Origin: Macrostomum lignano
Lineage: Eukaryota
DNA length: 64,000 bases
Direction of reading: 5' to 3'
Assembly: GCA_002269645.1 (NCBI GenBank)
Contig: NIVC01000390.1
Location: 310,001-374,000 of the forward strand
Part shown: positions 1,366 through 45,269 of the stretch, one piece after another
How positions within the stretch are numbered: the first letter of the stretch is position 1
Layout: each line of letters begins with the position of its first letter
Notes under the pieces: generated by a model
What the model was told of the DNA's origin: nothing
Seen by the model: only the letters and a program-made list of their open reading frames with translations
Database searches by the model: none
Program-made: the position numbers and the translations under genes

Positions 1366-1427
1366 CATACTTTATATTCGACTTTCTCTTATGTTGTCAA
1401 AGTCCGGTAAAAATCATTTGAACTAAC

Positions 1428-2159: not shown

Positions 2160-2614
2160 AATTTCTGCTTTTGTTGAGGTCTGCGGCGCTCTGCAACACT
2201 GAGGCTCTCTACAGAGGCTAAATGGTAAAATAAAAAAGCAGCCACAGCTTTCATGACGCCAGTTCCATCGCCATTGACTGGGGCCAGCTGTCCAATCAGC
2301 GCGGGTCTGGCTGGGGATGGTGGCACATGATATTGAGACGCAAAATTCAATAGCTGCACGTATAACGGCATTACTACTAGTAATTGAGTAAGCGCACAGG
2401 CTCGAATTATGCAAATACGGCAGCGACTCAGTTTGTAGAACAGACAGTTCAAAAGTAAAAGTGGATGAAAACATTGCTCCCAGTGTAAAACTGATCACTG
2501 AATGTTTATCAAGCTTACCTGTCAACGGTTAAAAGAATCTTCATCAATCGCTAGGTTTTAATAAAATTAAATATTTTCTGTCCCGCAAACATTGACTTCA
2601 ATTTTCATCGATAC

Positions 2615-23535: not shown

Positions 23536-26143
23536 AACCTATCAAAAATCTTTCTTACGGACCACTATTAAATTACTAGCTGCAAGATCATCGCAACACT
23601 ATGGTAAAAAGTTTATTATTATAAAAAATATTTCAAGAAGAAACACTAATTTACTACAAGGCAGAAAAATAAATACATATATTATTTACTTTGTTTTAAC
23701 TCTGCTAATTTTCGTAGATAATTATCTTTCTTTAAAATAGACCAATTGACACATTATTCTTTTAATTAGCAAGCATGCATGCATGCTGTCGTCTGCTAAT
23801 CTTGCTGCATATCATGAGACATAAGTAGGTGTCCCTAGTTGGTTTTTGGTGTGACTAATGTGCCATAGCAATTGCAAGAAGATGGCATAGATAAAGACGA
23901 ATAGAGCCATCTTCTACATTTGGATTATATGTTTAGATGGCATATAATCCAAATTAAAAAATTAAGTAATTATGCTAAATGGCATAACCGACCTAGCAAA
24001 AAACCCAGATTTAAATTAAAAGCGATATTTAAAATGTGGTTCCTGTCAATGTCGTAAACTCATGGTTATTCTGTTATGTTAATAATTTCTCATTTATCAC
24101 CATGAAATTTTAATTTTATGCGCAATATTAATTATTGGAAATACACTGGGCCATAAATATCGAAACCTATTATTATTAAATTGTTAACAGGTGTGGATCT
24201 AGAAAATTTTGAATGGGGGGTGCAGATTACTAAGTTACATGTATATCTATATTCTATATTATGTACAATCTAAGCTAAGCTCAAGTGGCAATAACAAGCA
24301 AAAGAGAAGCAGAGATATGGGGAAGAAGCTGCAAGGTAGAACATGGACAATTCGCAGCTTGCCATAGGCTAGACAGTTGAACAGGTCACAGTTGGAAAAT
24401 TTTGGATTTGGAATTTTTTTCCAAATATTTTTAAAATGTGCTTCCAAATATAAAAATCAAGATATCAAAACAAATGTAATTGTAAAAGAATGTAATCATT
24501 ACTTGCTTTTTTCAAAATGCAAATATATAGATTTAGCTAAGGCCTATAGGCCTCGTAAAGTTATCAAATTGCATAAATGTAACATCAATTAGTGTATTAA
24601 TACTAATAGTTATAAATAGATTAGATATATAAGAATTTGGTTTTGCTAGATACTATATAGATATAATATAAATCAAAGATAGAATTGTTTAGAACTTTAG
24701 GCCCTACCTTTAACTTTTGGCCTATATTTGGAAAAACATTTGGATGTTTGGATTCAGATTTAGAATTTTTGTATATTCAGATTTGGTTATAGAATTTTGC
24801 AAAAATCTATATTTTTCTATCATTAAGCCATGGTAGGCCTACAATCGGCTATATCATGTCTTATGTATTAAAAAAATAAAAGTGATGACTCATGAATTTT
24901 TCAAAATTTTAGATATATTCATTATAATATAAGACAAAACTTAAAAGATGAATAAAAAATAGGAACAATAGTAATAATTATATTAGCTTTGCATTTTATG
25001 ATTTCCTAGTCTAAATGTTTAAATATATAGAGACTACTCAATAACTAGGGATAGGAAACAATATGTACAAAAGTTGGAGGCCAATCTATTAATAACTTAG
25101 TCCTTAAAAAGTATTGCTTAGATAGATTTTTACCACTGACACAAACTCATTGACTATAAGGTAAAACCTACTATCAAAGAAATGCTTTCTATGGACTAAG
25201 TTATTAATTAGAATGGCTTCCAACTTTTGTAGTTTTCTATCCCAAATATTGAGCTGTCCCTGTATATAAGACAAAAGAGATTTAGTATAGGCCTATTGTG
25301 AATAGACCAAATAGTCAATAGATAATAGTATTAAAAACAGCAAAAAAAGTTAACAAAACAAGTACATCAAAATACTAGCCTATCATAGTCTACATGTAAA
25401 TGAACTAGACTGCAGTTTTAACTAGTTGAAACTGTATATTTGTTATTTTGGGAATGAGTTTAATTTTTTATATGATAATAACAACATGCTAACTATGACC
25501 TTACTTAGAACTGCCAATAGTGAATGGCAAAGCCAAAAACTAGTACTTTTTGTTTCTAAGTCTTAAGTCTTAAAAGCATACAAATAAGAAAAAATGAGTA
25601 TTGGACTAAGTATCAGACTAAGGTATTGGCAATATGTTCTAGAATTGCTAACTTTTATATGTATGGTCATGCATTAAGCAAATATGTTATCAAAGGTACA
25701 GTTGAACAGAGCAGCTCTTGGCTTTGAACTGACTAGTTGATTATAGTGCTACATTTGATGCATAGCTTTTTTAGCCTATTCATCAGTGCCAAAATATTGG
25801 CATTTAAATGTGCAGCAATTATTTGAAGATGTGCAGCCTGCTATAATAACTCTTTGTTAACTGTTTTGTAAACTATTGGTTATTTTTAAAAACCAATAGA
25901 CAAACAGCCTATACTTAATAATCAATACTTACTTTTGTAAATTATACTGAAATGCAAAACTTTACGAAAAATTTGTATGCAATCAAATTATTTGCTTTAT
26001 TGTTTGTGCAAGACTTGTCAACCTACTTTTAGTAATGCTATTAATTGAAATTAATTATGCACCATTCCATTCAAGATTTGGCGGCTAAATTTTAAACTAA
26101 AAATTTTATGCATTCCTGACGTACATTGCGCTGTTCTGACAAG

Positions 26144-27790
26144 CCAATTACTGCAAACTTACACCCTTCCCACTCCTCCTACACCTTCATTTTCCCTCGG
26201 CTGACACTCGCCATTACTATCATCTGTCTCCCATATTGGGAGGCAAAGCGAGGCTTAATTGTGGCGGAGGTGTCAAGCGCTATCGGGGAGCCGGCCGCGG
26301 CTGCTCCTATCGTTGCTGATGCCGGAGTGGAACCTGAAGTTGTTACTGAAGCCAGACCTGAAATTGTCGCCGAAGCCAGACCTGAAGCTGTCGCTGAAGC
26401 AGCAGCTCTAGCTGTAGTTGAAGCGGGGCCTGAAGCTATTGCTGAGGCGACACCTGAAGTTGTAGTTGAATCGAGACCTGAAGTTATTGCTGAAGCGGAA
26501 CCTGAACTTGAAGCTGAAGCGGGGGCGCTAGTTGTTGCCGACGCGGGGCCCGAAGAAGCTGTTGCGGGCGCTGATTCAACAGCCGATGCGGACACCGCCG
26601 CGGGCGCAGTTGGGAGCGTTGCGTCCGGCGCAGACGATCAAATCTGCGCCTGGGTGGTGGAAGCCATGGACCGATGCCAGCGGCAGAAGCGGCGCCGCGA
26701 TCTCGATACGATAATCCGATTCACGCTGAATAAGCACAGCGTCGGAGCGGAAACTGTTCGCCAGGCGATTCGGCGGATGGAGGAGCGCGGCATCATAATC
26801 GGCGTGCCCATTGCCGACTATGTCAGCTACCGGATGACCGCCAAGTCGCCGGCTTGCGGCGGCATCGCGTCGCCCGCTCCAGCTGGCGGGGTAGCCGGCG
26901 TCGGAGTCGCAGTCGGCAGCGGCGGCCTCTCCGCCGATCGTCGGAAGCGCCGGCGCAGCGGGCCAGACGGAGCGCCGACTCCGCCTGTTAAGCGTCCCCT
27001 GGCGCCAGTGTTTCCCAAACTGGAGCCGGGAGATCCCATGCGCATGCCGCTGATGCCGCACGGCCATCATCATCATCAGCATCATCACGCCGCCGCTCTG
27101 GCCGCCGCCGCTGCTGGACGACCCGTCGTGCTGCCTGCCACAGCCGTTGTGGTGTCCAAGTCCGGCCAGATACCGTTGGCGAGTCTGCAGTCGCACTCGC
27201 AGCAGCGCCAGCAGCATCAGGTGCCGACTGCTATTGCTCCCGCGCCGCCGCAGCAGCAGCCGCCGCTTCAGGCTACGACGCAACTAGTTCACGCGGCATT
27301 TTCAACTCAGCAGATTCACCAGCAGGCCACTGCTCAGCATCAGCAGCAACAGCAGCCGGTTTTTGTCACGGCCAAGCTGTCAATGGACGGAAGTCACATG
27401 ATTGTTGGCGACATCGCCGCCGAAGCAGTCGCCAGTCGGACTGCTGCCGCCGGTCAACTCAATGGGGCCTGCGAGGCCGCCGCGGCGCCGGTTGTTGACG
27501 CGCCAGCAGACGGCCAGGCGACCAACGGCGGCGGCTGCAGCGACGGCACGGGTGTTGAAGAGACTCCCAGCGTGTTAGACTGGACAGTTGAGGAGGTTCG
27601 AGACTGGCTGAAGTGCGAAGGCTACCCAGCTGAAGCTGACTGTTTCCTTAACGAACAGGTTGACGGAATCTCTCTAATGCTAATTAGACGCATGGATTTG
27701 CTCACCAAAGTCGGCATTAGGCTGGGTCCGGCTATTAAAATATTCGCCAAAATATGCGATCTGCAGACTCGAGTTTCCACTCTGTCCTGA
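26144..27790 (+). CDS. SAMD1: SAMD1/atherin-like protein: acidic E/A/V/P repeat N-terminus, winged-helix domain, low-complexity linker, C-terminal SAM domain
   Basis: WVVEAMDRCQRQKRRRDLDTII...SYR matches the SAMD1/KAT6 winged-helix pattern. WTVEEVRDWL...FLNEQVDGISLMLI...GIRLGPAIKI is a SAM domain. The 5' end is uncertain: in-frame TGA at 26117-19, first in-frame ATG at 26666 (inside the domain), phase-0 acceptor tgacaag|26144. Confidence 0.8.
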   Translation, partial: PITANLHPSHSSYTFIFPRLTLAITIICLPYWEAKRGLIVAEVSSAIGEPAAAAPIVADAGVEPEVVTEARPEIVAEARPEAVAEAAALAVVEAGPEAIAEATPEVVVESRPEVIAEAEPELEAEAGALVVADAGPEEAVAGADSTADADTAAGAVGSVASGADDQICAWVVEAMDRCQRQKRRRDLDTIIRFTLNKHSVGAETVRQAIRRMEERGIIIGVPIADYVSYRMTAKSPACGGIASPAPAGGVAGVGVAVGSGGLSADRRKRRRSGPDGAPTPPVKRPLAPVFPKLEPGDPMRMPLMPHGHHHHQHHHAAALAAAAAGRPVVLPATAVVVSKSGQIPLASLQSHSQQRQQHQVPTAIAPAPPQQQPPLQATTQLVHAAFSTQQIHQQATAQHQQQQQPVFVTAKLSMDGSHMIVGDIAAEAVASRTAAAGQLNGACEAAAAPVVDAPADGQATNGGGCSDGTGVEETPSVLDWTVEEVRDWLKCEGYPAEADCFLNEQVDGISLMLIRRMDLLTKVGIRLGPAIKIFAKICDLQTRVSTLS

Positions 27791-28003
27791 GGCTCTATTT
27801 AGAAACTACTTATATTTCGAACAATTTTTTTCTGAAATGAAAAACTTTGTTTACTGATGTTGTTAGAATGTCTTTATAATCTTTTATTGACCGTCCTTTA
27901 TTGCATGCTTAATTATTATTGCTTTAGTTATTTGAAATTTATCTATAAGATCGTGAAAATAAAGGCTCGGATGAGGCCAAAAGCTTATAGGGTACCCTCC
28001 CTG

Positions 28004-28270
28004 AACTGCTGACTGGATAGCCACTCTCCCTGAACTGCTGACTGGATAGCCACCCTCGCTGAACTGCTGACTGGATAGCCACCGTCCCTGAACTGCTGAT
28101 CGGATAGCCACCCTCCCTGAATTGCTGACTGGATAGCCACTCTCCCTGAACTGCTGACTGGATAGCCACTCTCCCTGAACTGCTGACTGGATAGCCACTC
28201 TCCCTGAACTGCTGACTGGATAGCCACTCTCCCTGAACTGCTAATCGGATAGCCACTCTCTCTGAACTGC
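28004..28270. repeat. 29-bp minisatellite TCTCCCTGAACTGCTGACTGGATAGCCAC, about 9 copies
   Basis: Read directly; lies after the SAMD1-like AATAAA (about 27958). Confidence 0.95.
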
Positions 28271-28954
28271 TACCACCCTTGTTAAACCATGTGGCTATTA
28301 TAATTACGTGAATATAATTAATCGTTATTGTTAGTCTTACTAATAATTGATTTTCATGTTTTCTAAGTTTATTGTATAAGACCGAAATTGCCTATTATTT
28401 TTTAGGCACATTGTAAATATTTTATAGTTTGTTTGTTTATAGCTAAGAGTACTTAACTTGTCTTTTAATTGACAAAGGTTTTTTTGTTTAAATGTAGTGC
28501 ACGCTTTTATATAAGTTGTCATTTTTTGTTATAATCGATTGCTCGCAAATGCAGACTCTTGCAAACATTGTAATTTAATAATGTCGTGACAATTAGCGAC
28601 TGTCTACTATAAGTAGACAGATGGAACATCAAAAGCGATTTTTATAGCTAGTTTTCGCAAGTGCAGAGTTTGTCTGCAACTGCCATTTTGCGCCACCTTT
28701 TCTGTAAATTAAAACAAATTCGTTCATTCGTGTGCAAACGTGCAATTTTGTGTTTGTCACTTGTAAGCTCCTGTGCAACACTGCCGGCTGCTATAGAAAC
28801 TGCTTTTCTTACATTTATAGCTAAATTTTATCAATAAAAGCGTGTACTGTATTGATCCGTCGCTGCTTAAGTACTAGATAAGAGTTATCTTTGTTTCCAA
28901 ATATCCACTGAAATGTTAGACATTAAAGCTGCTCTTAGTAATTTCTAAAACTTT

Positions 28955-29470
28955 TACCCCGAGAGATTTTCTCACGGAATTCCCCTATAATTCATGGAAT
29001 TATTCTACAATTCTCTCACGGAATTCCCCTGTTTCTCATGGAATTCTCCTATGATTCTCTCACGGAATTCCACTATGTTTCTCATGGAATTCTCCTATGA
29101 TTCTCTCACGGAATTCCCCTATGATTCTTATGGAATTCTCCTATGATTCTCTCACGTAATTCCCCTATGTTTCTCATGGAATTATTCAACAATTCTCACG
29201 GAATTTCCCTGTTTCTCATGGAATTCTCCTATGATTCTTCTCACAAAAATCCCCTATGATTCTCATGGAATACCCCAACGATTCTCTATGAATTTCCCTA
29301 AGATTCTCGCATGGAATTCCCCTACAATTCTCTCACAGAATTCCCCTATGATTCTCATGGAGTTATCCTATGATTCTCTCACGGAATTCCCTTTTGATTT
29401 TATCGGTCTTCTCTGGATAAATTCCACAGAAATTATACCCCGGAATTACCTTATGGTCTCAGTCTCCTCT
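28955..29470. repeat. Degenerate GGAATTC-rich repeat with 22-25-bp subunits
   Basis: Recurrent CTCTCACGGAATTCCCCTATG and TTCTCATGGAATTCTCCTATGA. Confidence 0.85.
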
Positions 29471-29874
29471 CGAGAATTCCACTCTCTCCCCGGATCTCCC
29501 CGTGATTTTCGTCTCTTCTGTGTCTGAGCATCATCATCATTTTCTACTTGGATTGTTATGGACACCATAATTTTCTTTATTGCTTCAAATGCTTGAATTG
29601 TGTTAGCTAATCATTGCAATCTGCTCCGTTGGCTAACTAATTGTTTTGCTGCACAAGTTTCTATTTATTGTTGCTAATCCCAATTTAGCGACTGGTATAT
29701 TTAATCTGACTGTTCATGTATCCTATATATTATTTATGTATTGTAAATTACATTATACATGTTCTTTATCAGCTCTTGTTGCGAAGTAGCCATTAATGCG
29801 CTAAGTAACATTATACTGTTACTGTTGTATTTTGTTTGTTTTTGTAACAACTGATCTAAATTGACTCTGACTCC

Positions 29875-31020
29875 TCTGTCCCTTGTGGCCCAGTGACCCT
29901 TCTATCCCCTGTGCCCCTGTGCCCCTGTGCCCCAGTGACCATTCTATCCTCTGTCCCATACTACATCAGTGACCATTCTATTCCCTGTCCCCTGTGCCCC
30001 AGTGACCATTCTATCCTCTGTCCCATACTGCATCAGTGACCATTCTATCCTCTATCCCATACTGCATTAGTGACCATTCTATCCCCTGTCCCCTGTGCCC
30101 CAGTGACCATCTATCCTCTGTCCCATACCGCATCAGTGACCATTCTATCCCCTGTCCCATACCGCATCAGTGACCATCCTATCCTCTGTCCCATACCGCA
30201 TCAGTGACCATTCTATCCCCTGTCCCATACCGCATCAGTGACCATTCTATCCCCTGTCCCATACCGCATCAGTGACCATTCTATCCTCTGTCCCATACTG
30301 CATCAGTGACCATTCTATCCCCTGTCCCATACCGCATCAGTGACCATCCTATCCTCTGTTCCATACCGCATCAGTGACTATTCTATCCCCTGTCCCATAC
30401 CGCATCTGTGACCATCCTATCCTCTGTCCCATACCGCATCAGTGACCATCCTATCCTCTGTCCCATACCGCATCAGTGACCATTCTATCCCCTGTCCCAT
30501 ACCGCATCAGTGACCATCCTATCCTCTGTCCCATACCGCATCAGTGACCATTCTATCCCCTGTCCCATACCGCATCAGTGACCATTCTATCCCCTGTCCC
30601 ATACCGCATCAGTGACCATTCTATCCCCTGTCCCATACCGCATCAGTGACCATTCTATCCCCTGTCCCATACCGCATCAGTGACCATTCTATCCCCTGTC
30701 CCATACCGCATCAGTGACCATTCTATCCCCTGTCCCATACCGCATCAGTGACCATTCTATCCTCTGTCCCATACTGCATCAGTGACCATTCTATCCCCTG
30801 TCCCATACCGCATCAGTGACCATCCTATCCTCTGTTCCATACCGCATCAGTGACTATTCTATCCCCTGTCCCATACCGCATCTGTGACCATCCTATCCTC
30901 TGTCCCATACCGCATCAGTGACCATTCTATCCCCTGTCCCATACCGCATCAGTGACCATTCTATCCCCTGTCCCATACTGCATCAGTGACCATTCTATCC
31001 TCTGTCGCATACCGCATCAG
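29875..31020. repeat. 34-bp minisatellite CCCATACCGCATCAGTGACCATTCTATCCCCTGT, about 33 copies
   Basis: Period 34; a variant block recurs 476 bp (14 units) later. Confidence 0.97.
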
Positions 31021-31604
31021 TGCCGCAATCTGTAGCCTTTATTCCCGAATGATTAAAGTCTTCAAAAAACAGTGTCGCTATCTTCCAGCAAACTTATACA
31101 AAAGCAAATAGCAACTTATAGCCATATTTTTATTGAAGTTACGCTTTCCCAGTGTACAAGCAATCAAATTTGCATTGTTCAGCCTTTTCCTAATAACCGC
31201 ATGCGTTCAACTGCTTAACGAGTAGCCTTGATTAGCTAAATCGATGTATTGTTTCCCATTGGGATACTATATTTGAATAAGTTTTTTATTATTACAAATT
31301 TTAAATTAGCTCAGCTTTTTAATTATACATAATTTATATGAGTTATTTGATATAAATTGGTCGCAATAATGTGTGTGTAGTCCAATGCGCTTGCGTAATC
31401 TCGTGCTATAGCAATTTTTCTGAAGCCATGTACAGTTTTTTATGGCTGAAAATTAGTGCTGAGGTCTTCTTTATTCTTATTTAACCTAGCTATTTTATGT
31501 CATTCCTGACCCCTTAGTTCCTGTCCTAATGTTATAGCTGGCAATATCTTTATCCCAATAGTTCTGTCATACAGTCCCAAAAATTAAGTTACTGCCATCT
31601 CACC

Positions 31605-33470
31605 CAATTCAACCAGTGCCATCTCACCCAATTCAGCCAGTGCCATCTCACATAGTCAAGCCAGTGTCATCTCACATAGTCAAGCCAGTGCCATCTCACA
31701 CAGTCCAGCCAGTGCCATCTCACACAGTCAAGCCAGTGCCATCTCACATAGTCAAGCCAGTGCCATCTCACACAGCCAATTGCTATTGCCATCTCACACA
31801 GTCAAGCCAGTGCCATCTCGCCCAATCCAGCAAGTGCCATCTCACGCAGTCAAGCCAGTTCCATCTCACACAGTAAAGCCAGTGCCATCTCACACAGTCA
31901 AGCCAGTGCTATCTCACATAGTCAAGCCAGTGCCATCTCACAGTTATAATAGTCAAGCCATTTCCGTCTCACAGTTATAATAGTTAAGCCAGTGCCATCT
32001 CACAGTTATAATAGTCAAGCTAGTGCCATCTCACACAGCCAAGCCAGTGCCATCTCACACAGTTAAGCCAGTGCCATCTCACACAGTCAAGCCAGTGCCA
32101 TCTCACACAGTCAAGCCAGTGCCATCTCACACAGTCAAGCCAGTGCCATCTCACATAGTCAAGCCAGTGCCATCTCACACAGTCAAGCCAGTGCCATCTC
32201 ACACAGTCAAGCCAGTGCCATCTCACACAGTCAAGCCAGTGCCATCTCACACAGTCAAGCCAGTGCCATCTCACACAGTTAAGCCAGTGCCATCTCACAG
32301 TTATAATAGTCAAGCCATTTCCGTCTCACAGTTATAATAGTTAAGCCAGTGCCATCTCACAGTTATAATAGTCAAGCTAGTGCCATCTCACACAGCCAAG
32401 CCAGTGCCATCTCACACAGTTAAGCCAGTGCCATCTCACACAGTCAAGCCAGTGCCATCTCACACAGTTAAGCCAGTGCCATCTCACAGTTATAATAGTC
32501 AAGCCAGTGCTGTCTCACAGTTATAATATTCAAGCCAGTGCCATATCACAGTTATAATATTCAAACCAGTGCCATCTCACACAGTCAAGCCAGTGCTATC
32601 TCACACAGTCAAGCCAGTGCCATCTCACACAGTCAAGCCAGTGCTATCTCACACAGTCAAGCCAGTGCCATCTCACACAGTCAAGCCAGTGCCATCTCAC
32701 ACAGTCAAGCCAGTGCCATCTCACAGTTATAATAGTCAAGCCAGTGCCGTCTCACAGTTATAATATTCAAACCAGTGCCATCTCACAGTTATAATATTCA
32801 AGCCAGTGCCATCTCACAGTTATAATAGTCAAGCTAGTGCCATCTCACACAGCCAAGCCAGTGCTATATCACAGTTATAATATTCAAGCCAGTGCCATCT
32901 CACAGTTATAATAGTCAAGCTAGTGCCATCTCACACAGTCAAGCCAGTGCCATCTCACACAGTCAAGCCAGTGCCATCTCACACAGTCAAGCCAGTGCCA
33001 TCTCACACAGTCAAGCCAGTGCCATCTCACACAGTCAAGCCAGTGCCATCTCACACAGTCAAGCCAGTGCCATCTCACATAGTCAAGCCAGTGCCATCTC
33101 ACACAGTCAAGCCAGTGCTATCTCACACAGCCAAGCCAGTGCCATCTCACATAGTCAAGCCAGTGCCATCTCACACAGTCAAGCCAGTGCCATCTCACAC
33201 AGCCAAGCCATTGCCATCTCACATAGTCAAGCCAGTGCCATCTCACACAGTCAAGCCAGTGCCATCTCACACAGTTAAACCAGTGCCATCTCACAGTCAA
33301 GCCAGTGCCATCTCACATAGTCAAGCCAGTTCCATCTCACAGTCAAGCCAGTGCCATCTCACATAGTCAAGCGAGTGCCATCTCACACAGCCAAGCCAGT
33401 GCCATCTAACACAGCCAAGCCAGTGCCATCTCACACAGTCAAGCCAGTGCTATCTCACACAGCCAAGCCA
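31605..33470. repeat. 24-bp minisatellite AGCCAGTGCCATCTCACACAGTCA with longer TTATAAT-containing variants, about 75 copies
   Basis: Read directly; ends about 35 bp before the ELP2 acceptor. Confidence 0.97.
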
Positions 33471-33488
33471 GTCAATCTATATGATGCT

Positions 33489-33505
33489 CTGTATTCGCAA
33501 TTCAG
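33489..33505 (+). promoter_or_regulatory. Splice acceptor ahead of the first ELP2 codon (candidate SL trans-splice site)
   Basis: TGTATTCGCAATTCAG|GCT; no coding donor exon recognised upstream. Confidence 0.6.
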
Positions 33506-36500
33506 GCTCGAATATATTCGGAGTACATATCGGCCAATCTGAACCAGTGCGCCCGGCCGGCCGACTGGGGTTCCGATGGCTTGTTGCTATGCGCCGTACA
33601 ATCCTGCGTCGGCCTCGCCCGGTTGGCCCCGCCCGGTCCGGAGCGTCGGCTGGTTCGCCTGGTCGGAGGCTGCCACACAGCGAGCGTGACGGCGGTGCGC
33701 TGGGTGGCCGACTCCGACCATCAGCAGCGGCGCCTCGGCCTGTCCTGCTCGGCTGACGGCACCGCTAGACTGTGGCTTGCCGGTGGGCCCGACTGCCAGC
33801 TGGACAGTCTGGCCTGTCTGAGCGGCGGGCACGGCAGCCAGGCTACACTGGAGAATGTTGACGGTCTGGCTGTTGACTCTGGAGTGCTGCACGGCGAACC
33901 GACAGGGGCTCTGGTGGCCACGGCCGGCTCGGATCATCGACTGGTGCTGTGGCGGCTAGCTACGAGTAATAGTCAGGTGAAGTATCTTAATGCAATCACG
34001 GGGGTGGTTTACGCGCGTACTTACAGTCGGATGTATTTAATGGTTTCACTGTGATTTACTGTGATTTACACCTGCCCTAATGAGCAGATGTGCAACCGAC
34101 AGCTCAGCCCCAGCTTTTTGCACGGCGCATCTGAAGGCTGCGTACGGCTGTTCAGTCCAAGGACTGGGGGTCACCACACACACCCACAATTGCCCCAGCT
34201 AATGCTGGCATCCATTTTACAGCTGGGTGAACTGAAGCAATGCAGAGTTAAGTGTCTTGCTCACGGACACAACTCGATCCGAGTGGGTCGAGAATCGAAC
34301 CCCCGACCTTTCGGTGAGCCCAACGCTCTAATCACTAGGCTACAACCACTCTTTACTGCTCCCTATTGGCTGAGAATCCTCAGCTTCTGCTTGTTGGAGT
34401 ATTTTCATTAGTAGGTAACACATCCAATGCAGGATAGGAGCTTTTAGGGCCGGAAATAGAGCACTTCACAGGTAGAATATCTTTCTATGCTTTTAGCTTC
34501 CTCTCAGAAAGAAATCACTTTTGAGAGTCTCCCCCCAAATTCTTGCCGGGATTCCCCACCGTGATTTTACGTATCAATAATTTGAGAATCGCAGCAAGAA
34601 ATTCCCCATTTAATTATTCCCCATCATTTTCATCTTTAGATAATTATTACCTGAAAGATTCCTACGGAATTCGTGTCACTTTCAACTGTCAGTTTCTCTC
34701 CCCGAAAACCCCTTGCACTTCCAGCGATTCTCCCGGAATTTCCCCGGAAATCCCCCGGACTCTCAAACATTTCGGCTTCCTCTCGTGAATCTTTTTTCAG
34801 AGAATTCCTCCTTTAGGAATTTCGCCTAAGAATATGGTTTCCACTTGGGAATCGCTTCCAGAGATGTCCTCGGGAATTCCAAAGCGAGTGTTTTATTAAT
34901 AATTTCTGCTAATTTTCAATGGCAGTCGGCTTGGTCAGTGTCTCGTGTTGACGACATCAGCCTCGGCGGCGGGTTTGCATTCGGCCTGCGGCTCATCCGG
35001 TTCAACAATTCGGTGCTGCTGGCCTACGGCGACGACGATGGCGCATTGAATCTGGCCGAAACCGCTGGTGGCGAGGCGATTCGGCGAGTAATTCGCGTCA
35101 GCGGCGGCCACCAGGACTGGGTGCGCGACATCGACTGGGTGGAATTGCCCGACCAGGAGGGGTGCGCTCTGATTGCCACGGCTAGTCAGGACTCCACGGT
35201 CAGGCTGTGGCGGCTGGAGCGTCTGCCAGATTATGACAACGCTGCGGTGACTGGCAAAGGGGACAGTTATAGCGATGGCAAGCGGCCGGCTCGTCTGCTC
35301 GATGTTGACCGTCAGGTGGCTTCTGAGGCTGGCGTGGGCTTCGGGCGGATTGCAATTCGACTGGAATCCGTGCTGCAGGTGTGCGGCTTGCTGCTTTTAT
35401 TGTGCTTTCCGCTGGGCTAATCAGCGGGCTTAGCTCTACTGGGCTAATCAGCGGGCTTAGCTCTACTGGGCTAATCAGCGGGCTTAGCTCTACTGGGCTA
35501 ATCAGCGGGCTTAGCTCTACTGGGCTAATCAGCGGGCTTAGCTCTACTGGGCTAATCAGCGGGCTTAGCTCTACTGGGCTAATCAGCGGGCTTAGCTCTA
35601 CTGGGCTAATCAGCGGGCTTAGCTCTACTGGGCTAATCAGCGGGCTTAGCTCTACTGGGCTAATCAGCGGGCTTAGCTCTACTGGGCTAATCAGCGGGCT
35701 TAGCTCTACTGGGCTAATCAGCGGGCTTAGCTCTACTGGGCTAATCAGCGGGCTTAGCTCTACTGGGCTAATCAGCGGGCTTAGCTCTACTGGGCTAATC
35801 AGCGGGCTTAGCTCTACTGGGCTAATCAGCGGGCTTAGCTCTACTGGGCTAATCAGCGGGCTTAGCTCTACTGGGCTAATCAGCGGGCTTAGCTCTACTG
35901 GGCTAATCAGCGGGCTTAGCTCTACTGGGCTAATCAGCGGGCTTAGCTCTACTGGGCTAATCAGCGGGCTTAGCTCTACTGGGCTAATCAGCGGGCTTAG
36001 CTCTACTGGGCTAATCAGCGGGCTTAGCTCTACTGAGCTGATCATTCAGTTAAAGTCTCACTGACGCCTACTCGCGCAGGGCCACGATTCGGCCGTCAAC
36101 TCCGTCAGATTCTTCTCTGTCAATGATGATGATGGCGCCGATGGTCAGCCCCAGTTGCGGCTGCTAACGAGCAGCATGGACCGCAGCCTGGTGGTCTGGC
36201 AGCCGCAGGCAGACGCTGGCGGACTCTGGCTGGAGCGCGACCGCGTCGGCTCACTCGGCGGCAATCAGCTCGGCTTCCTGCTTGGCCTGCCCAGTCCGCC
36301 TGATTCGCTGTCGGCTGGCGGTCAATCATTGTTAGCCTGCGGATTCAACGGCGCGCTCAGCCTGTGGACTCGGGTTGAAGGCGGCGAAACTGGAGAGGCA
36401 ACTCGCTGGCGCCCACTGGGCTGCTTCGGCGGGCATTCGGCGCCAGTTGAGTCGATAGCCTGGTCGCCAGGCGGCGCTTATTTGTTGAGCGCGTCGGCTG

Positions 36501-38837
36501 ATCAAACCTGCCGGGCGCACGGGCCGTGCTGTAGGCTTGGCGGCCGATGGGGCCAGCTGGCCAGGCCGCAGGTGCACGGTTACGATATGACCGCGCTGGC
36601 CTTTCTAGACGACAGCGGCTGCCGGGTCTATGCCAGCGCGGCTGAGGAGAAACCCGTGCGCTTGTTCCGCGCTCCCAATGGATTTCGGACTGTCCTGGCT
36701 CAGGTAGGTTTAGACAGTCAATTGTCAGGTGCGCCTAATCGAAAATATTTAGGCCAAACCAAATCTAAATTGGGCTTTGACTTACATATAGAAAGTGCTC
36801 AGTCAAAGCCAGAATACTCGAGAAGTGCTCAGTCAAAGCCAGAATACTCGAAAAGTGCTCAGTAAAGCCAAAATACTCAAGAAGTGCTCAGTCAAAGCCA
36901 GAATACTCAGAAGTGCTCAGTCAAAGTCTGAATACTCAGAAGTGCTCAGTCAAAGCCAGAATACTCGAAAAGTGCTCAGTCAAAACCATAATACTCAGAA
37001 GTGCTCAGTCAAAGCCAGAATACTCGAGAAGTGCTCAGTCAAAGTCAGAATACTCAGAAGTGCTCAGTCAAAGCCAGAATACTCTAGAAATGCTCAGTAA
37101 AGCCAGAATACTCAAGAAGTGCTCAGTCAAAACCAGAATACTCAAAAGTGCTCAGTCAAAGTCAGAATACTCAGAAGTGCTCAGTCAAAGCCAGAATACT
37201 CGAAAAGTGCTCAGTCAAAACCATAATACTCAGAAGTGCTCAGTCAAAGCCAGAATACTCGAGAAGTGCTCAGTCAAAGCCAGAATACTCTAGAAATGCT
37301 CAGTAAAGCCAGAATACTCAAAAGTGCTCAGTCAAAACCAGAATACTCAAAAGTGCTCAGTCAAAGTCAGAATACTCAGAAGTGCTCAGTCAAAGCCAGA
37401 ATACTCGAGAAGTGCTTAGTCAAAGCCAAATTACTCTAGAAGTGCTCAGTCAAAGTCAGAATACTCAGAAGTGCTCAGTCAAAGCCAGAATACTCGAGAA
37501 GTGCTCAGTCAAAGCCAGAATACTCGAGAAGTGCTCAGTCAAAGCCAGAATACTCGAGAAGTGCTCAGTCAAAGTCAGAATACTCAGAAGTGCTCAGTCA
37601 AAGCCAGAATACTCGAGAAGTGCTCAGTCAAAGCCAAATTACTCTAGAAGTGCTCAGTCAAAGCCAGAATACTCAGAAGTGCTCAGTCAAAGCCAGAATA
37701 CTCGAGAAGTGCTCAGTCAAAGCCAGAATACTCAGAAGTGCTAAACCTGGGGTATTACTCGGGTAGTTCTCAGCTAAAAATGCTCGGAAAGTACTTGACC
37801 ATAAGTAATACGCACGGCAGGTCTCGAATGCCGACCCTAGCTGTCCCGAGCTGAAGCGCAGCGAGCCGCCGAACCCAGCCGACTCCGCGGATTCAGCCGA
37901 GCCGGAGTACGCCCAAGTACCGTCGCTCGGCCTGTCAAACCAGCCAATGCAGTCGGCAACGTCGGGGCAGCGAGGAAGCGGCGCCGCCGACCCGGAGGAG
38001 CCTCCAAGCGAGGACGCTCTGGCTGATGGCGGCCTGTGGCCGGAGGTCCGCAAGCTGTTCGGCCACGGCGGCGAGGTTCAATCGCTGGCCGCCTGTCCGC
38101 GCCGACGCCTCCTAGCGGCCGCTTGCCGGGCCACCCAACCCGACCAGGCCGGCATTTTGGTTTGGCGCTTGGCGCCAGACTGGAGTCCAAGCTGGCGCCA
38201 AACGCTGGAGCATCACGGCCTCACTGTGGCGCAATTAGCATTCGACTCGTCTGGCAGACGTTTGCTAGCCGTGTCGCGCGACCGCGGCTGGAGCCTCTGG
38301 CGACTGCCGGACGACGAGGACTCGGACAGTCAGATCCAGCTGCTCAGCGCCAGGCGGGCCGCTCACGCCCGCATCGTATGGTCCTGCGCCTGGCCGCCGA
38401 CCCCCACAGATGATGAGGCAGAGAAATTCTTTGCCACCGGTTCGCGAGATCGTCGAATCTCGGTCTGGTTGGCGGCGTTGGCAGCGCCGACTGAGACGAA
38501 GGCGGAGCAGCCGGAGCCAGTGGCCTCGCTGGAGCTGGATGCCGCGGTGACGGCGCTGAGCTTTCGACCTACAGCAACAGCAACAGAATTTTGCTGCGCC
38601 GCCGGTTTGGAATCTGGCGCCGTAGCGTTGATTAGTGTGCTGGCGCCTGGCGCCGATTCGGCGTCGGCTGGTGGTTGGCGCCTGGCGCCGATCGCCATTG
38701 TGGCGTCGGTGCACGCGGCCACCGTGCGCCAGCTGGCGTTTCGACCCGGACAGCCTGACTGTCTGGCCAGCTGTTCGGCCGATGCGACTGTGCGGCTGCT
38801 GCGGATTTGCAGCGATGAGGAAGTCTCCGACTCATGA
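33506..38837 (+). CDS. ELP2: Elongator complex protein 2 (WD40); exons 33506-33976, 34926-35378, 36080-36703, 37821-38837 (854 codons plus initiator)
   Basis: ELP2 motifs: YISANLN..ADWG, GHQDWVRDI, LESVLQ|GHDSAVNSV, LLTSSMDRSLVVW, ARPQVHGYD, SAAEEKPVRLFRAP, VPSLGLSN, LWPEVRKLFGHG, HARIVWSCAW, FATGSRDR. All three introns are GT-AG and phase 0. No genomic in-frame ATG (see findings). Confidence 0.95.
34048..34347 (-). mobile_element. tRNA-derived SINE, family 1 (CORE/Meta-like central domain), antisense in ELP2 intron 1
   Basis: Minus strand: A box TAGCCTAGTGA, B-box-like GGTTCGATTCT, central GTGTCCGTGAGCAAGACACTTAAC...CAGTTCACCCAGCTGTAAAATGG, tandem AGTAAATCAC tail. A second copy lies at 45609. 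Confidence 0.85.
35414..36034. repeat. 27-bp perfect tandem repeat GGGCTAATCAGCGGGCTTAGCTCTACT x23 in ELP2 intron 2
   Basis: 621 bp = 23 x 27; no variant unit seen. Confidence 0.98.
36792..37743. repeat. 28/30-bp minisatellite GTGCTCAGTCAAAGCCAGAATACTC(G)AGAA in ELP2 intron 3
   Basis: Read directly. Confidence 0.97.
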
Positions 38838-38862
38838 TATCAATCGTTATTCTTTGATCCTG

Positions 38863-39975
38863 AGACCACTAGCCCAGCCGAGAATCGCCCCTGACACCAC
38901 TAGCCCAGCCAAGAATCGCCCCTGACACCACTAGCCGAGTCGAGAATCGCCCCTGACACCACTAGCCGAGTCGAGAATCGCCCCTGACACCACTAGCCGA
39001 GTCGAGAATTGCCCCTGACACCACTAGCCCAGCCAAGAATCGCCCCTGACACCACTAGCCCAGCCAAGAATCGCACCTGACAGCATTAGCCCAGCCAAGA
39101 ATCGCACCTGACACCACTAGCCCAGCCAAGAATCGCTCTTGACGCCACTAGCCACCCGAGACGCCCCTGACGCCACTAACCAATCCAAGAATCGCCCCTG
39201 ACACCACTAGCCGAGTCGAGAATCGCCCCTAACACTAGCCCAGCCAAGAATCGCACCTGACACCACTAGCCGAGCCAAGAATCGCACCTGACACCATTAG
39301 CCGAGCCAAGAATCGCCTCTGACGCCACTAGCTCATCTGAGAATCGCTTTTGACGCCACTAGCCCAGCCAAGAATTGCCCCTGACACCACTAGCCCAGCC
39401 AAGAATCGCCCCTGACACCACTAGCCCAGCCAAGAATCGCACCTGACACCACTAGCCCAGCCAAGAATCGCACCTGACACCATTAGCCGAGCCAAGAATC
39501 GCCTCTGACGCCACTAGCTCATCTGAGAATCGCTTTTGACGCCACTAGCCCACCTGAGAATCGCCCCTGACGCCACTAACCAATCCAAGAATCGCCCCTG
39601 ACACCACTATCCGAGCCGAGAATTGCCCCTGACACCACTAGCCCAGCCAAGAAGCGCCCCTGACACCACTAGCCGAGTCGAGAATCGCCCCCTGACACCA
39701 CTAGCCCAGCCAAGAATCGCTCTTGACGCCAATAGGCCACTTGAGAATCGCCCCTGACGCCACTAGCCCAGCCAAGAAGCGCCCCTGACACCACTAGCCG
39801 AGTCGAGAATCGCCCCCTGACGCCACTAGCCCACCTGAGAATCGCTTTTGACGCCAATAGGCCACTTGAGAATCGCCCCTGACGCCACTAGCCCACCCGA
39901 GAATCGCCCCTAAGATCACTAACCAATCCATGAATCGCCCCTGACTCCACTAGCCCACCTGCGAATCGCCCTTAA
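38863..39975. repeat. About 31-bp minisatellite ACTAGCCCAGCCAAGAATCGCCCCTGACACC directly after the ELP2 stop
   Basis: About 36 copies; same family as 43325-44212. Confidence 0.97.
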
Positions 39976-41654: not shown

Positions 41655-41671
41655 CCTATTTTTGCTTACAG
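41655..41671 (+). promoter_or_regulatory. Splice acceptor 39 nt upstream of the EXOSC4 ATG (candidate trans-splice site)
   Basis: CCTATTTTTGCTTACAG|, a strong pyrimidine tract, preceded by TTGAT. Confidence 0.55.
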
Positions 41672-41710
41672 TTCGGCGGTATTCGCCCAGAGTAGAACCC
41701 GGATTCCCCA

Positions 41711-43324: not shown

Positions 43325-44212
43325 AGATAGCAGCCCAACCATGAATCGCCTCTGACTTTAACCCAGCCATGAATCGCCCCTGACACCAGCCCAACCAAAA
43401 ATCGCCCCTGACACCAGCCCAGCCAAGAATCGCCCCTAACACCACACCAGCCCAGCCAAGAATCGCCCCTGACACCAGCCCACCCAAGAATCCCCCCTGA
43501 CACCAGCCTAGACAAGAATCGCCCCTAACACCAGCCTAGTCAAAAATCGCTCCTAACACCAACCCAGCCAAGAATCGCCCCTGACACCAGCCCAGACAAG
43601 AATCGCCCCTAACACCAGCCCAGACAAGAATCGCCCCTAACACCAGCCCAGCCAAGAATCGCCCCTGACACCAACCCAGCCAAAAATCGCCACTGACACC
43701 AGCCCAGCCAAGAATCGCCCCTAACACCACTAGCCGAGTCGAGAATCGCCCCTGACACCAGCCCAGACAAGAATCGCCCCTAACACCACACCAGCCCAGC
43801 CAAGAATCGCCCCTGACACCAGCCCGGACAAGAATCGCCCTAACACCAGCCCAGCCAAGAATTGCCCCTGACGCCAGCCCAGCCAAGAATCGCCCCTGAC
43901 ACCAACCCAGCCAAAAATCGCCACTGACACCAGCCCAGCCAAGAATCGCCCCTAACACCACTAGCCGAGTCGAGAATCGCCCCTGACACCAGCCCAGTCA
44001 AGAATCGCCCCTAACACCACACCAGCCCAGCCAAGAATCGCCCCTGACACCAGCCCGGACAAGAATCGCCCTAACACCAGCCCAGCCAAGAATCGCCCCT
44101 GACGCCAGCCCAGCCAAGAATCGCCCCTGACGCCAGCCCAGACAAGAATCGCCCCTGACACCAGCCCAGCCAAGAATCGCCCCTGACACCAACCCAGCCA
44201 AGAATCGCTCCT
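43325..44212. repeat. About 28-bp minisatellite CCAGCCCAGCCAAGAATCGCCCCT(G/A)ACA between EXOSC4 and DUSP
   Basis: About 30 copies; ends about 20 bp before the DUSP ATG. Confidence 0.97.
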
Positions 44213-44223
44213 GATTCCCGCAG
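44209..44223 (+). promoter_or_regulatory. Splice acceptor 7 nt upstream of the DUSP ATG (candidate trans-splice site)
   Basis: CTGATTCCCGCAG|CGGCGGCATG. Confidence 0.5.
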
Positions 44224-44230
44224 CGGCGGC

Positions 44231-45269
44231 ATGGCGCTATCCAGTGACAGGCTCAGTCACATTGTGGAAGGCCTCTGGCTAAGCGGCGTAGAGGCGGTGA
44301 CCAATCACAGCCTACTGACATCGGCCCGCATCTCGCACCTGTTAGGCGTGGTCGAACCGGAATTCAACTACGCCTCCTATTCCCGACCCTTCGAGTTTCC
44401 AATCCGAACCCTGCGATTGGACGCCGAGGACAGTCTTAGGCAGGATTTAACGCAGCACTTCACCAAGGCGGCCCGGTTTATACACGAGGCCCGGGCTGCC
44501 AATGGTCAGGTGTGTTGTGCCCGCTTTGAAAGTTAAATTTAGAAGATTTGAAAATCAATCTGAGTCATATACAGCGTCTGACTCGCGCCACGACCCCTGG
44601 TTCGATTCCGTGTTCAGCCACTTAGTTGGGGCTTGTGCCCTGTAATTGGCTAGGGGGGGGGGTTGCCGTACGATTCACGCCCGTAGGGGCCAACCCCCAG
44701 GGCGCAGCGAGTGTACATGTCTGACGATTAGAAAGTCAGGGGCCGCTGTACACCCTGCGTTATTGAATCAGCATTAACCTGTTTGGTATATGCGTTGGGG
44801 CATACTAGAAGATTTAAAGTTTAGCTTATTCATTCTTATGGCTATCTGTATAGCTCTCTATAGGCAATAATTGTGGGAAACGGATATCATTTTTTGCCTG
44901 AATTTGAGATTCGAACTCGCGGTAGCCTTAGGCTTTTTTAATAGGCTTAATTAATTTGCATGGATCACCTGCCAGGTACTGGTACACTGTCTGATGGGCA
45001 TCTCCCGATCGGTGACCATTGTCTGCGCCTACCTGATCGCCCTGACCGGCCTGTCAGTCGATGACGTCATCGCGGCAGTTAAAACTCGCCGAATATTGGC
45101 CGATCCGAATCCGAATTTTCTACGCCAGCTGCACAGATTTGGCCAATCTGCTCAGGCTGGCCAGCTCAGGGAGCAGCTGCTCAGGGATTGGCCGGAAACT
45201 CAGCAGATGGTTGAGCGAGACCGCAGGGAGCTGGTCAGCCTGCTGAAGCTGGTCAAGCGGCGAAAGTGA
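44231..45269 (+). CDS. Atypical dual-specificity phosphatase (DUSP22/15-like); exons 44231-44509, 44976-45269 (190 aa)
   Basis: SHIVEGLWLSG, DAEDS..L..HF..AARFIHEAR..NGQ|VLVHCLMGISRS (HCxxGxSRS active site), ADPNPNFLRQL. GT-AG intron, phase 0. Confidence 0.9.
44570..44765 (+). mobile_element. SINE family 2 copy in the DUSP intron
   Basis: Same ordered motifs as 42225-42505. Confidence 0.75.

What the first reader, a model, noticed from the sequence alone, without database searches (positions are those of the whole stretch)
33470..33600. ELP2 has no genomic start codon; its N-terminus fits initiation on the AUG of a spliced leader
Seen: in the ELP2 frame there is a TGA at 33482-84, an acceptor ...GCAATTCAG| ending at 33505, and then, exactly in phase 0, GCT CGA ATA TAT TCG GAG TAC ATA TCG GCC AAT (ARIYSEYISANLNQCARPADWG). 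No in-frame ATG occurs before the conserved YxS..N..ADWG motif, and the ATGs at 33481 and 33484 are out of frame. Upstream is 1.9 kb of satellite. Known: flatworm SLs end in AUG, and in Schistosoma this AUG can act as the initiator Met. Inference: SL + exon gives M-ARIYSEY..., placing the conserved Tyr about where it sits in other ELP2 proteins, so translating this tRNA-modification gene would depend on trans-splicing.
Basis: partly seen in the sequence, partly recalled or inferred. Interest (0 to 1): 0.85.

Follow-up and report, generated by a model that had tools for sequence, protein, structure and literature searches.

The report
Flatworm ELP2 borrows spliced-leader start codon
The ELP2 gene of the flatworm Macrostomum lignano has no start codon of its own and almost certainly receives its AUG from the trans-spliced leader RNA, an already well-documented flatworm habit, so this is a tidy new example and an annotation fix, not a new mechanism.

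Summary
The window is Macrostomum lignano Mlig_3_7 contig NIVC01000390.1 (bases 310001-374000). The ELP2 frame has TGA at 33482-84 and an ATTCAG acceptor ending at 33505. It then reads GCT CGA ATA TAT... with no in-frame ATG until codon 341. The two upstream ATGs are out of frame.

The M. lignano spliced leader ends in ...TTGCATG, so SL plus exon 1 reads M-ARIYSEYISAN. That N-terminus has the same length as ELP2 in other animals and fungi.

Three paralogous genomic copies keep the same acceptor, and none has an in-frame ATG. All three GenBank protein models are flagged "partial". The model for this copy starts at 33506, the first base after the AG. I found no plausible upstream cis exon that could supply an ATG.

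I saw no SL-containing read, so trans-splicing at this site is strongly inferred, not shown.

Use of the SL AUG as initiator Met has been known in flatworms since Cheng et al. 2006, with dozens of genes in Schistosoma and Echinococcus. About 45% of conserved M. lignano genes are trans-spliced. Verdict: interpretation supported (about 0.8), a new member of a known kind, low interest.

The parts
31593..33472 (.). 24-nt satellite (unit TGCCATCTCACACAGTCAAGCCAG, about 74 copies) filling the region upstream of ELP2. It is the presumed outron or intergenic spacer.
   Evidence: TRF. The same satellite abuts the acceptor in the two paralogous copies. It contains no ATG.
33473..33505 (+). 33-nt unique spacer between the satellite and exon 1. 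It carries the out-of-frame ATGATG (33481-33486), the in-frame TGA (33482-33484) and the acceptor ATTCAG (33500-33505).
   Evidence: Paralogue NIVC01000985.1 has a 5-nt deletion here, 20 nt upstream of the acceptor, which removes the TGA and one ATG. A frameshifting indel is therefore tolerated and the region is non-coding.
33500..33505 (+). Predicted SL trans-splice acceptor ATTCAG|G. It matches 5 of 6 positions of the published M. lignano trans-acceptor motif [T/C]TNCAG.
   Evidence: Motif from PMC8629364. Phase and context. The GenBank CDS of this copy starts at the next base.
33506..33976 (+). ELP2 exon 1 (157 codons, ARIYSEY...ATSNSQ), followed by donor GTGAAG. It has no ATG in frame.
   Evidence: Pfam WD40 hit. 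Identical to the N-terminus of PAA84063.1.
34926..35378 (+). ELP2 exon 2 (151 codons). Acceptor ...AATGGCAG, donor GTGTGC, phase 0.
   Evidence: Matches P0001, P0096 and P0097.
36080..36703 (+). ELP2 exon 3 (208 codons). It contains the first in-frame genomic ATG, at 36176-36178 (codon 341). Donor GTAGGT.
37821..38837 (+). ELP2 exon 4 (338 codons plus stop TGA at 38835-38837).
   Evidence: Same C-terminus (...EEVSDS) as PAA53402.1 apart from a few substitutions.
41666..41671 (+). Acceptor TTACAG of the downstream RNase PH (exosome subunit) gene. In the GenBank model for this copy it is joined in cis to the ELP2 exon-3 donor, giving ...LAQ|FGGIRPE*.
   Evidence: This indicates that ELP2 and the next gene are co-transcribed.

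Best explanation
The window is Macrostomum lignano. Its ELP2 gene (four exons, 854 genomic codons) begins at a trans-splice acceptor (ATTCAG ending at 33505) rather than at a start codon.

Proposed mechanism: the primary transcript carries a satellite-filled outron with two out-of-frame AUGs. The spliceosome replaces that outron with the 35-nt spliced leader, whose last three bases are AUG. The junction falls in phase 0, so the mature mRNA reads ...UUGC-AUG-GCU-CGA-AUA-UAU... and encodes M-ARIYSEYISAN..., a full-length 855-aa ELP2. No other AUG in that frame exists before codon 341, so a complete two-propeller ELP2 requires trans-splicing.

Shown here: the sequence facts, the species, the AUG at the SL 3' end (from the literature), the phase, the fit of the N-terminal length, conservation in three paralogues, and the 5'-partial public gene models.

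Inferred: that SL is actually joined at 33505/33506, and that ribosomes start at the SL AUG.
For: - **Species:** the best protein hit is M. lignano ELP2 at 98% identity. Locus L003 from GCA_002269645.1 NIVC01000390.1 is base-for-base identical to the window.
- **SL sequence:** the M. lignano SL is CGGTCTCTTACTGCGAAGACTCAATTTATTGCATG, and the top trans-acceptor motif is [T/C]TNCAG. About 30% of all genes and 45.3% of human-conserved genes are SL trans-spliced (PMC8629364).
- **Nearby AG sites:** only 33505, 33523 and 33547 are in phase with ELP2, and 33505 has the best context. All AGs in the adjacent satellite give short out-of-frame ORFs.
- **N-terminal length:** with the SL Met there are 6 residues between the Met and the conserved YIS..N motif, against 3-12 (mostly 3-8) in 14 orthologues. 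An example is Gilbertella, MVKVTSEYIS. Query residue 43 aligns to mouse residue 43 and query residue 45 to human residue 45.
- **Public gene models:** the 90% cluster holds three GenBank models, all flagged partial. PAA84063.1, from this locus, starts ARIYSEY at window 33506. PAA73940.1 starts 3 nt and PAA53402.1 15 nt downstream of the same acceptor in their own copies. An in-frame TGA lies 21 nt upstream, yet the CDS starts at 33506 and not at 33485. The RNA-seq-based transcript model must therefore begin at 33504-33506.
- **Paralogues:** all three copies keep ATTCAG|GCT and lack an in-frame ATG. One has a 5-nt indel just upstream. The exons are 98-99% identical, with 19-21 synonymous against 21-25 non-synonymous codon differences.
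- **No cis exon candidate:** between the upstream gene and ELP2 there is no ATG followed within 12 codons by a GT[AG]AG donor.
- **Precedent:** flatworm SL AUGs serve as initiator Met (Cheng et al. 2006, as summarised in PMC3510090, PMC9851317 and PMC12582326). PMC10468722 calls the Macrostomum SL ATG a translation start codon.
Against: - I saw no SL-containing read, EST or cDNA for this gene. The junction sequence was absent from the one collection I could scan, and the supplementary tables held for two of the M. lignano papers do not list ELP2.
- The acceptor has A rather than a pyrimidine at position -6 of the published motif, and only a moderate pyrimidine tract (10 of 15).
- The models for the two paralogues start 3 and 15 nt inside exon 1, so annotated 5' ends are not always exact.
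- A very short cis-spliced 5' exon lying beyond the region I scanned, or one with a weak donor, cannot be formally excluded. Nor can near-cognate initiation (ATT at 33500, ATA at 33512).
Confidence: 0.8

Rival explanations
1. A conventional cis-spliced 5' exon, upstream of or inside the repeat-rich region, supplies the ATG and ends in phase 0. Under this reading the 33505 acceptor is an ordinary intron acceptor.
For: The acceptor sequence alone cannot tell cis from trans. M. lignano introns are often filled with satellites: ELP2 introns 2 and 3 are. The region upstream of 31593 contains unique AT-rich sequence with ten ATGs.
Against: Between 27800 and 33505, no ATG is followed within 12 codons by a consensus GT[AG]AG donor. 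The best candidates score only 2 of 4. The RNA-seq-guided GenBank models of all three copies are 5'-partial, with no upstream exon. Orthologue alignment leaves room for only about 0-3 extra residues.
Confidence: 0.08
2. SL trans-splicing occurs at another in-phase AG, namely GAG ending at 33523 or CAG ending at 33547. The protein would then start M-YISAN... or M-CARPADW...
For: Both sites are in phase 0 and would also give an open ELP2 frame. The GenBank model of one paralogue starts at the GAG codon.
Against: Their contexts are poorer: 8 of 15 pyrimidines, and GAG is not the CAG of the motif. The paralogue model includes the GAG itself, so it does not begin after that AG. The model for this copy starts at 33506. 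The residues ARIYSE align with orthologue N-termini.
Confidence: 0.04
3. Translation starts at a genome-encoded near-cognate codon in the ELP2 frame (ATT at 33500, ATA at 33512 or 33527, CTG at 33539), independently of the SL AUG.
For: These near-cognate codons lie in frame between the TGA and the conserved motif.
Against: On an unspliced transcript, two out-of-frame AUGs at 33481 and 33484 precede them and open a 91-codon ORF. ATT at 33500 lies upstream of the annotated transcript start. A perfectly placed AUG is supplied by the SL in a species where this is routine.
Confidence: 0.04
4. The missing start codon reflects a pseudogene copy or an assembly error. A functional copy elsewhere in the genome would then carry a normal ATG.
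For: M. lignano is a hidden polyploid with many duplicated genes (PMC8629364, PMC10468722). One paralogue, NIVC01000985.1, does carry a 1-nt frameshift in exon 4.
Against: All three assembled copies share the same ATG-less 5' end. This copy has an intact 854-codon frame with canonical GT..AG introns, all in phase 0. The ratio of synonymous to non-synonymous differences suggests purifying selection. No ATG-bearing M. lignano ELP2 exists among 5.8 billion protein clusters.
Confidence: 0.03

Closest known systems
Schistosoma SL-AUG-initiated mRNAs (Cheng, Cohen, Ndegwa & Davis 2006, J Biol Chem 281:733; read only through PMC9851317, PMC3510090 and PMC12582326)
   Same: The flatworm SL ends in AUG. 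The AUG is in frame with the recipient ORF. The recipient lacks its own suitable AUG, so the SL Met is required to obtain the conserved N-terminus. More than 40 such cDNAs were reported, and the SL AUG is in frame in 28% of trans-spliced S. mansoni transcripts.
   Different: The species and lineage differ (a free-living macrostomorph, not a neodermatan parasite), as does the SL sequence. ELP2 is not known to me to be on their list. In vivo use of the SL AUG was shown experimentally there, but not here.
Echinococcus granulosus SL-bearing transcripts that need the SL AUG (PMC3510090)
   Same: The same logic was applied there. [quoted passage not shown] For some, the SL AUG is required for the N-terminus to match orthologues, and the trait is conserved between species.
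   Different: That study was based on cDNA or EST sequences that physically contain the SL. My case is based on the genome sequence plus a 5'-partial annotation.
M. lignano SL trans-spliced gene set (Wudarski et al. 2017, PMC5730564; Ustyantsev & Berezikov 2021, PMC8629364)
   Same: Same organism, same SL and the same kind of acceptor motif. Conserved housekeeping genes are preferentially trans-spliced. Repeats inflate outrons and intergenic spacers, as they do here.
   Different: In the text I could read, those papers do not discuss the SL AUG as a start codon or list ELP2. Only a figure legend in PMC10468722 mentions the ATG as a start codon.
slORFs in nematodes, tunicates and trypanosomes (slORFfinder, PMC9851317)
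   Same: An SL-donated start codon creates or extends an ORF on the recipient mRNA.
   Different: Those cases mostly use non-AUG NUG codons inside the SL and often produce alternative or out-of-frame ORFs. Here a canonical AUG at the very 3' end of the SL starts the main conserved protein.
ELP2 (Elongator subunit 2; structures 8AVG_B mouse, 8PTX_B human, 5M2N_A yeast)
   Same: Full-length homology with E values from 1e-57 to 1e-91, a double WD40-propeller architecture, and N-terminal numbering that coincides with mammalian ELP2.
   Different: The protein is divergent (about 31-36% identity to animal ELP2s), very Met-poor, and lacks a genome-encoded initiator.

Membership tests
Flatworm mRNAs initiated at the spliced-leader 3'-terminal AUG | The organism uses an SL whose last three bases are AUG, followed by a GU donor. 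| tested here: met
   The window is identical to M. lignano NIVC01000390.1. The SL ends ...TTGCATG and is followed by GTAAG in the SL RNA gene (PMC8629364).
Flatworm mRNAs initiated at the spliced-leader 3'-terminal AUG | The mRNA is actually SL trans-spliced at the proposed acceptor. | tested here: inconclusive
   I saw no SL read. Indirect support: the TNCAG acceptor; the GenBank 5'-partial CDS begins at the first base after the AG even though the frame is open 21 nt further upstream; neighbouring genes' annotated starts also lie 1-5 nt after CAG acceptors. The junction search found nothing.
Flatworm mRNAs initiated at the spliced-leader 3'-terminal AUG | The SL AUG is in frame with the main ORF, with no intervening stop. 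| tested here: met
   SL plus exon 1 translates to MARIYSEYISANLNQCARPA....
Flatworm mRNAs initiated at the spliced-leader 3'-terminal AUG | No genome-encoded in-frame AUG could give the conserved N-terminus. | tested here: met
   There is an in-frame TGA at 33482-84 and the first in-frame ATG is at codon 341. The same holds in three paralogues.
Flatworm mRNAs initiated at the spliced-leader 3'-terminal AUG | The N-terminus obtained with the SL Met corresponds to that of orthologues. | tested here: met
   MAFFT alignment of 15 N-termini. In the phmmer alignments, query residues 43 and 45 match mouse residue 43 and human residue 45.
Flatworm mRNAs initiated at the spliced-leader 3'-terminal AUG | Ribosomes initiate at the SL AUG in vivo. 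| not testable with these tools
   This needs Ribo-seq, N-terminal proteomics or a reporter assay.
ELP2 (Elongator complex protein 2) | Full-length sequence homology to ELP2, with two WD40 propellers. | tested here: met
   E = 2.6e-91 (mouse), 1.2e-87 (human) and 9.7e-57 (yeast) over residues about 43-788. Database hits are named elongator complex protein 2. Exon 1 has a WD40 Pfam hit.
M. lignano operon (polycistronic unit resolved by SL trans-splicing) | Same-strand neighbours, a trans-spliced downstream gene, and a repeat-adjusted intergenic distance under 1 kb (criterion of PMC8629364). | tested here: inconclusive
   The upstream SAMD1-like gene ends at 27790. The gap to 33505 is 5.7 kb, of which about 3.7 kb is tandem repeat, leaving about 2 kb, which exceeds the threshold. 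Downstream, an annotated isoform splices ELP2 exon 3 to the next gene's acceptor, which argues for co-transcription with the RNase PH gene.

The most novel reading that the evidence does not exclude
All paralogous ELP2 copies of an early-branching, free-living flatworm have lost any genomic initiator. Production of Elongator subunit 2, and with it wobble-uridine tRNA modification, would then be obligatorily gated by SL trans-splicing. If this holds for many conserved M. lignano genes, SL-AUG dependence would be ancestral to rhabditophoran flatworms and not a parasite peculiarity. It could also be dissected genetically in the only flatworm with stable transgenesis.
Probability: 0.3. Interest if true: 0.35.

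Novelty: new member of a known kind. Interest (0 to 1): 0.2.

Why it matters
The main value is for annotation. UniProt A0A1I8GP11 starts at exon 2, and the three GenBank ELP2 models are flagged partial. The correct product is very probably an 855-aa protein whose Met is not encoded at the locus. More generally, gene finders that demand a genomic ATG will truncate or split genes of this type in flatworms.

Biologically, this adds a conserved housekeeping gene from a basal free-living flatworm to the list of mRNAs that need the SL AUG. It does not change the understanding of trans-splicing or of Elongator.

Tried and rejected
- **RNA gene scans of the window:** the Rfam gathering scan and ARAGORN found nothing, so there is no SL RNA gene or tRNA. 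The 35-nt SL, allowing up to 3 mismatches, is absent from the window.
- **Direct transcript evidence:**
  - The SL-exon junction TTATTGCATGGCTCGAATATATTCGGAG gave 0 hits in metagenome contigs.
  - P0001 and the exon-4 ORF are not on record as gene products.
- **Literature:**
  - No paper pairs M. lignano with ELP2.
  - The supplements held for PMC5816591 and PMC5173321 do not mention ELP2 or these gene ids.
  - Those held for PMC5730564 are three small files that I listed but did not search.
  - Cheng et al. 2006 was not available, and my attempt to fetch Wasik et al. 2015 by a recalled PMC id failed. I cite Cheng only through secondary sources.
- **Micro-intron idea, rejected:** ATGATGCTCT|GTATTC...CAG would be a 15-nt intron and would end out of phase.
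- **Assembly frameshift linking ATGATG to ELP2, rejected:** three independent copies share the sequence, and the frame mod 3 = 1 ORF is unconserved GC-rich read-through.
- **Statistical argument from Met absence, rejected:** the lack of Met over 340 codons gives p about 0.14, because the whole protein is Met-poor.
- **Not attempted:** a search for other flatworm ELP2 N-termini. Exhaustive searches return unnamed proteins, and the yield looked low.
Full report
**What is in the sequence.**
- In the frame with position mod 3 = 2 there is a TGA at 33482-33484.
- The frame then reads TGC TCT GTA TTC GCA ATT CAG, with the CAG ending at 33505.
- From 33506 it reads GCT CGA ATA TAT TCG GAG TAC ATA TCG GCC AAT..., which translates to ARIYSEYISANLNQCARPADWG.
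- The ATGs at 33481 and 33484 are in another frame and open a 91-codon ORF that ends at 33756.
- Immediately upstream, 31593-33472 is a 24-nt satellite of about 74 copies.

- exons 33506-33976, 34926-35378, 36080-36703 and 37821-38837;
- all introns are GT..AG and phase 0;
- the model has 854 codons plus a TGA stop.

The product is ELP2. phmmer gives E = 2.6e-91 to mouse ELP2 (8AVG_B), 1.2e-87 to human (8PTX_B) and about 1e-56 to yeast. The first in-frame genomic ATG is codon 341, at 36176. The protein has only three Met, so the absence of Met over 340 codons is not significant on its own (p about 0.14). It does mean that no nearby alternative AUG exists.

**Which organism.** The best database hit is Macrostomum lignano "Elongator complex protein 2", A0A1I8GP11, at 98% identity. 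That entry is a fragment beginning at exon 2. Fetching the genomic places of its cluster-mates showed that locus L003 is identical to window 23506-51695. L003 is GCA_002269645.1 NIVC01000390.1, bases 333506-361695. The window is therefore bases 310001-374000 of that Mlig_3_7 contig.

**Does this species have an AUG-terminated SL?** Yes.
- Ustyantsev & Berezikov 2021 (PMC8629364) give a single 35-nt SL, CGGTCTCTTACTGCGAAGACTCAATTTATTGCATG, followed by GTAAG in the SL RNA gene.
- They report [T/C]TNCAG as the top motif at trans-splice acceptors.
- They report 30% of genes, and 45.3% of human-conserved genes, as trans-spliced.
- They note that repeats inflate the spacers in front of trans-spliced genes.

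The site here is ATTCAG|G. It matches the motif at 5 of 6 positions, with A instead of a pyrimidine at -6.

Joining the SL to 33506 gives ...TTGC ATG GCT CGA..., which translates to MARIYSEYISAN. The ATG has G at +4. Among all AG dinucleotides from 33440 to 33600, only 33505, 33523 and 33547 are in phase. The AGs in the satellite would all give short out-of-frame products.

**N-terminal length.** In a MAFFT alignment of 15 N-termini, the conserved (E)Y-I-S-x-x-x-N motif follows the initiator Met after 3-12 residues, mostly 3-8. With the SL Met, M. lignano has 6 (M-ARIYSE-YIS). That is identical in length to the fungus Gilbertella (MVKVTSEYIS). In the phmmer alignments, query residue 43 pairs with mouse residue 43 and query residue 45 with human residue 45. 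There is therefore room for at most a few more residues. The start must lie within a few codons of 33506, where the genome offers no ATG.

**Public gene models and paralogues.** The 90% cluster of A0A1I8GP11 contains three GenBank proteins from the Mlig_3_7 annotation, all flagged "partial".

| Protein | Gene id | Locus | First residues | Distance of CDS start from the acceptor |
|---|---|---|---|---|
| PAA84063.1 | Mlig000721.g6 | this locus (L003) | ARIYSEY | 0 nt (window 33506) |
| PAA73940.1 | Mlig012296.g2 | L002 | RIYSEY | 3 nt downstream |
| PAA53402.1 | Mlig000721.g2 | L001 | EYISAN | 15 nt downstream |

PAA53402.1 is 847 aa and complete at its 3' end.

That annotation is RNA-seq-guided. 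Transcript ends were cut at mapped SL-read peaks, and ORFs were called with TransDecoder (PMC5730564). In this copy the frame is open back to 33485, yet the CDS starts at 33506. The underlying transcript model must therefore begin at 33504-33506, which is at the acceptor. Neighbouring same-strand genes show the same signature: their annotated starts lie 1-5 nt after a CAG acceptor.

An alignment of the three copies around the site shows identical ...TGCTCTGTATTCGCAATTCAG|GCTCGAATATATTCGGAGTAC... in all of them, and no in-frame ATG in any. Copy NIVC01000985.1 has a 5-nt deletion 20 nt upstream of the acceptor, which removes the TGA and one ATG. A frameshifting indel at that position shows the sequence upstream of the acceptor is not coding.

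The exons are 98-99% identical between copies. They differ at 19-21 codons synonymously and 21-25 non-synonymously. That ratio is compatible with purifying selection and argues against a dead gene. The NIVC01000985.1 copy does, however, have a 1-nt frameshift in exon 4.

**The main rival, a cis 5' exon.** I scanned 27800-33505 (and back to 24000) for an ATG followed within 12 sense codons by a GT donor.
- Between the upstream SAMD1-like gene and ELP2, none has the GT[AG]AG consensus of M. lignano donors. The best score only 2 of 4.
- The only good candidate, at 24830, lies beyond the upstream gene.
- The satellite contains no ATG.

Together with the 5'-partial RNA-seq-based models, this makes a cis exon unlikely, though not impossible. 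Near-cognate initiation (ATT at 33500, ATA at 33512) would have to compete with two out-of-frame AUGs on an unspliced RNA. On the spliced RNA it is unnecessary.

**What I could not get.** I found no read, EST or cDNA that physically joins the SL to this exon.
- The junction search in the one scannable collection was empty.
- The supplementary tables held for two M. lignano papers do not list ELP2.

Trans-splicing at 33505/33506 is therefore a strong inference (I put it at about 0.8) and not an observation. Use of the SL AUG by ribosomes is inferred from precedent.

**Comparison with what is known.** The 3'-terminal AUG is a conserved hallmark of flatworm SLs. Its use as initiator Met was established by Cheng et al. 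2006 (J Biol Chem 281:733), which I could read only through secondary sources.
- PMC9851317 reports the SL AUG in frame in 28% of trans-spliced S. mansoni transcripts, with more than 40 cDNAs requiring it.
- PMC3510090 reports 143 of 187 E. granulosus SL clusters predicted full-length using the SL ATG, several strictly needing it, and conservation of the trait between species.
- PMC12582326 states that all reported flatworm SLs carry the terminal ATG.
- For Macrostomum, PMC10468722 labels the SL ATG as a translation start codon and left it on reads for annotation.

The ELP2 case is therefore a new, well-supported member of a known class. It is useful for correcting the partial GenBank and UniProt entries. 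It is not surprising to a flatworm molecular biologist.

**Verdict.** Novelty is "new member of a known kind" and interest is about 0.2. The decisive test is trivial with data that already exist: map SL-trimmed reads to NIVC01000390.1:343506.

Noticed in passing
window 36703 -> 41672 (acceptor TTACAG at 41666-41671; stop TAG at 41693-41695): The GenBank model for this locus (PAA84063.1, 523 aa) skips ELP2 exon 4. It splices the exon-3 donor to the acceptor of the downstream RNase PH (exosome subunit) gene and ends ...LAQFGGIRPE*. This implies read-through co-transcription of ELP2 and the next gene. If the SL joins at that acceptor, its AUG opens only an 8-codon uORF (MFGGIRPE*) ahead of the real ATG at 41711.
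   Followed up: partly
window 26120-55400, + strand: There is a run of same-strand genes separated by satellites: SAMD1-like (26120-27790), ELP2, an RNase PH exosome subunit (41.7-43.0 kb), a dual-specificity phosphatase (44.2-45.3 kb), two unknown ORFs, and PUS10 (52.2-55.4 kb). ELP2, the exosome subunit and PUS10 are all RNA-processing or tRNA-modification genes.
   Followed up: partly
window 44217-44233: The DUSP gene has the acceptor CCCGCAG ending at 44223, with its own ATG at 44231. Here the SL AUG would be out of frame. A 28-nt satellite (43331-44214) runs right up to the acceptor, as it does for ELP2. A related repeat with the shared core GCCCAGCCAAGAATCGCC follows the ELP2 stop (38859-39971).
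   Followed up: partly
window 26120-27790 and L001:3638, L002:2150: The SAMD1-like ORF is open for 175 codons before its first ATG (MDRCQRQKRR, just before the SAMD1_WH domain). The three paralogous copies are annotated with three different starts, one of them at that ATG. Its true start is unclear.
   Followed up: no
window 27897-27907: TTTATTGCATG, identical to the last 11 nt of the M. lignano SL, sits in the 3' region of the SAMD1-like gene. About 0.04 matches are expected by chance in the window. It is not followed by a GT donor, so it is probably coincidence.
   Followed up: partly
window about 34230-34345, minus strand (ELP2 intron 1): A tRNA-like segment with A-box and B-box-like sequences (GGTTCGATTCTCGACCC), resembling a tRNA-derived SINE fragment. 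ARAGORN calls no tRNA, and it is single-copy in the window.
   Followed up: partly
window 35412-36000 (ELP2 intron 2) and 36793-37742 (intron 3): The introns are largely made of minisatellites. The intron-2 array is 21.8 perfect copies of a 27-nt unit (100% matches), which suggests very recent expansion or assembly collapse.
   Followed up: no
L002 (NIVC01000985.1), exon 4, about 13421-14436: This paralogue has a 1-nt gap in exon 4, which explains the frameshifted C-terminus of PAA73940.1. It is either a decaying duplicate or an assembly indel.
   Followed up: partly
window 1392-2528 (-) and 12801-14048 (+): Two rhodopsin-family GPCR ORFs (7tm_1, E = 1e-41 and 2e-22) lie in the upstream part of the window.
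   Followed up: no
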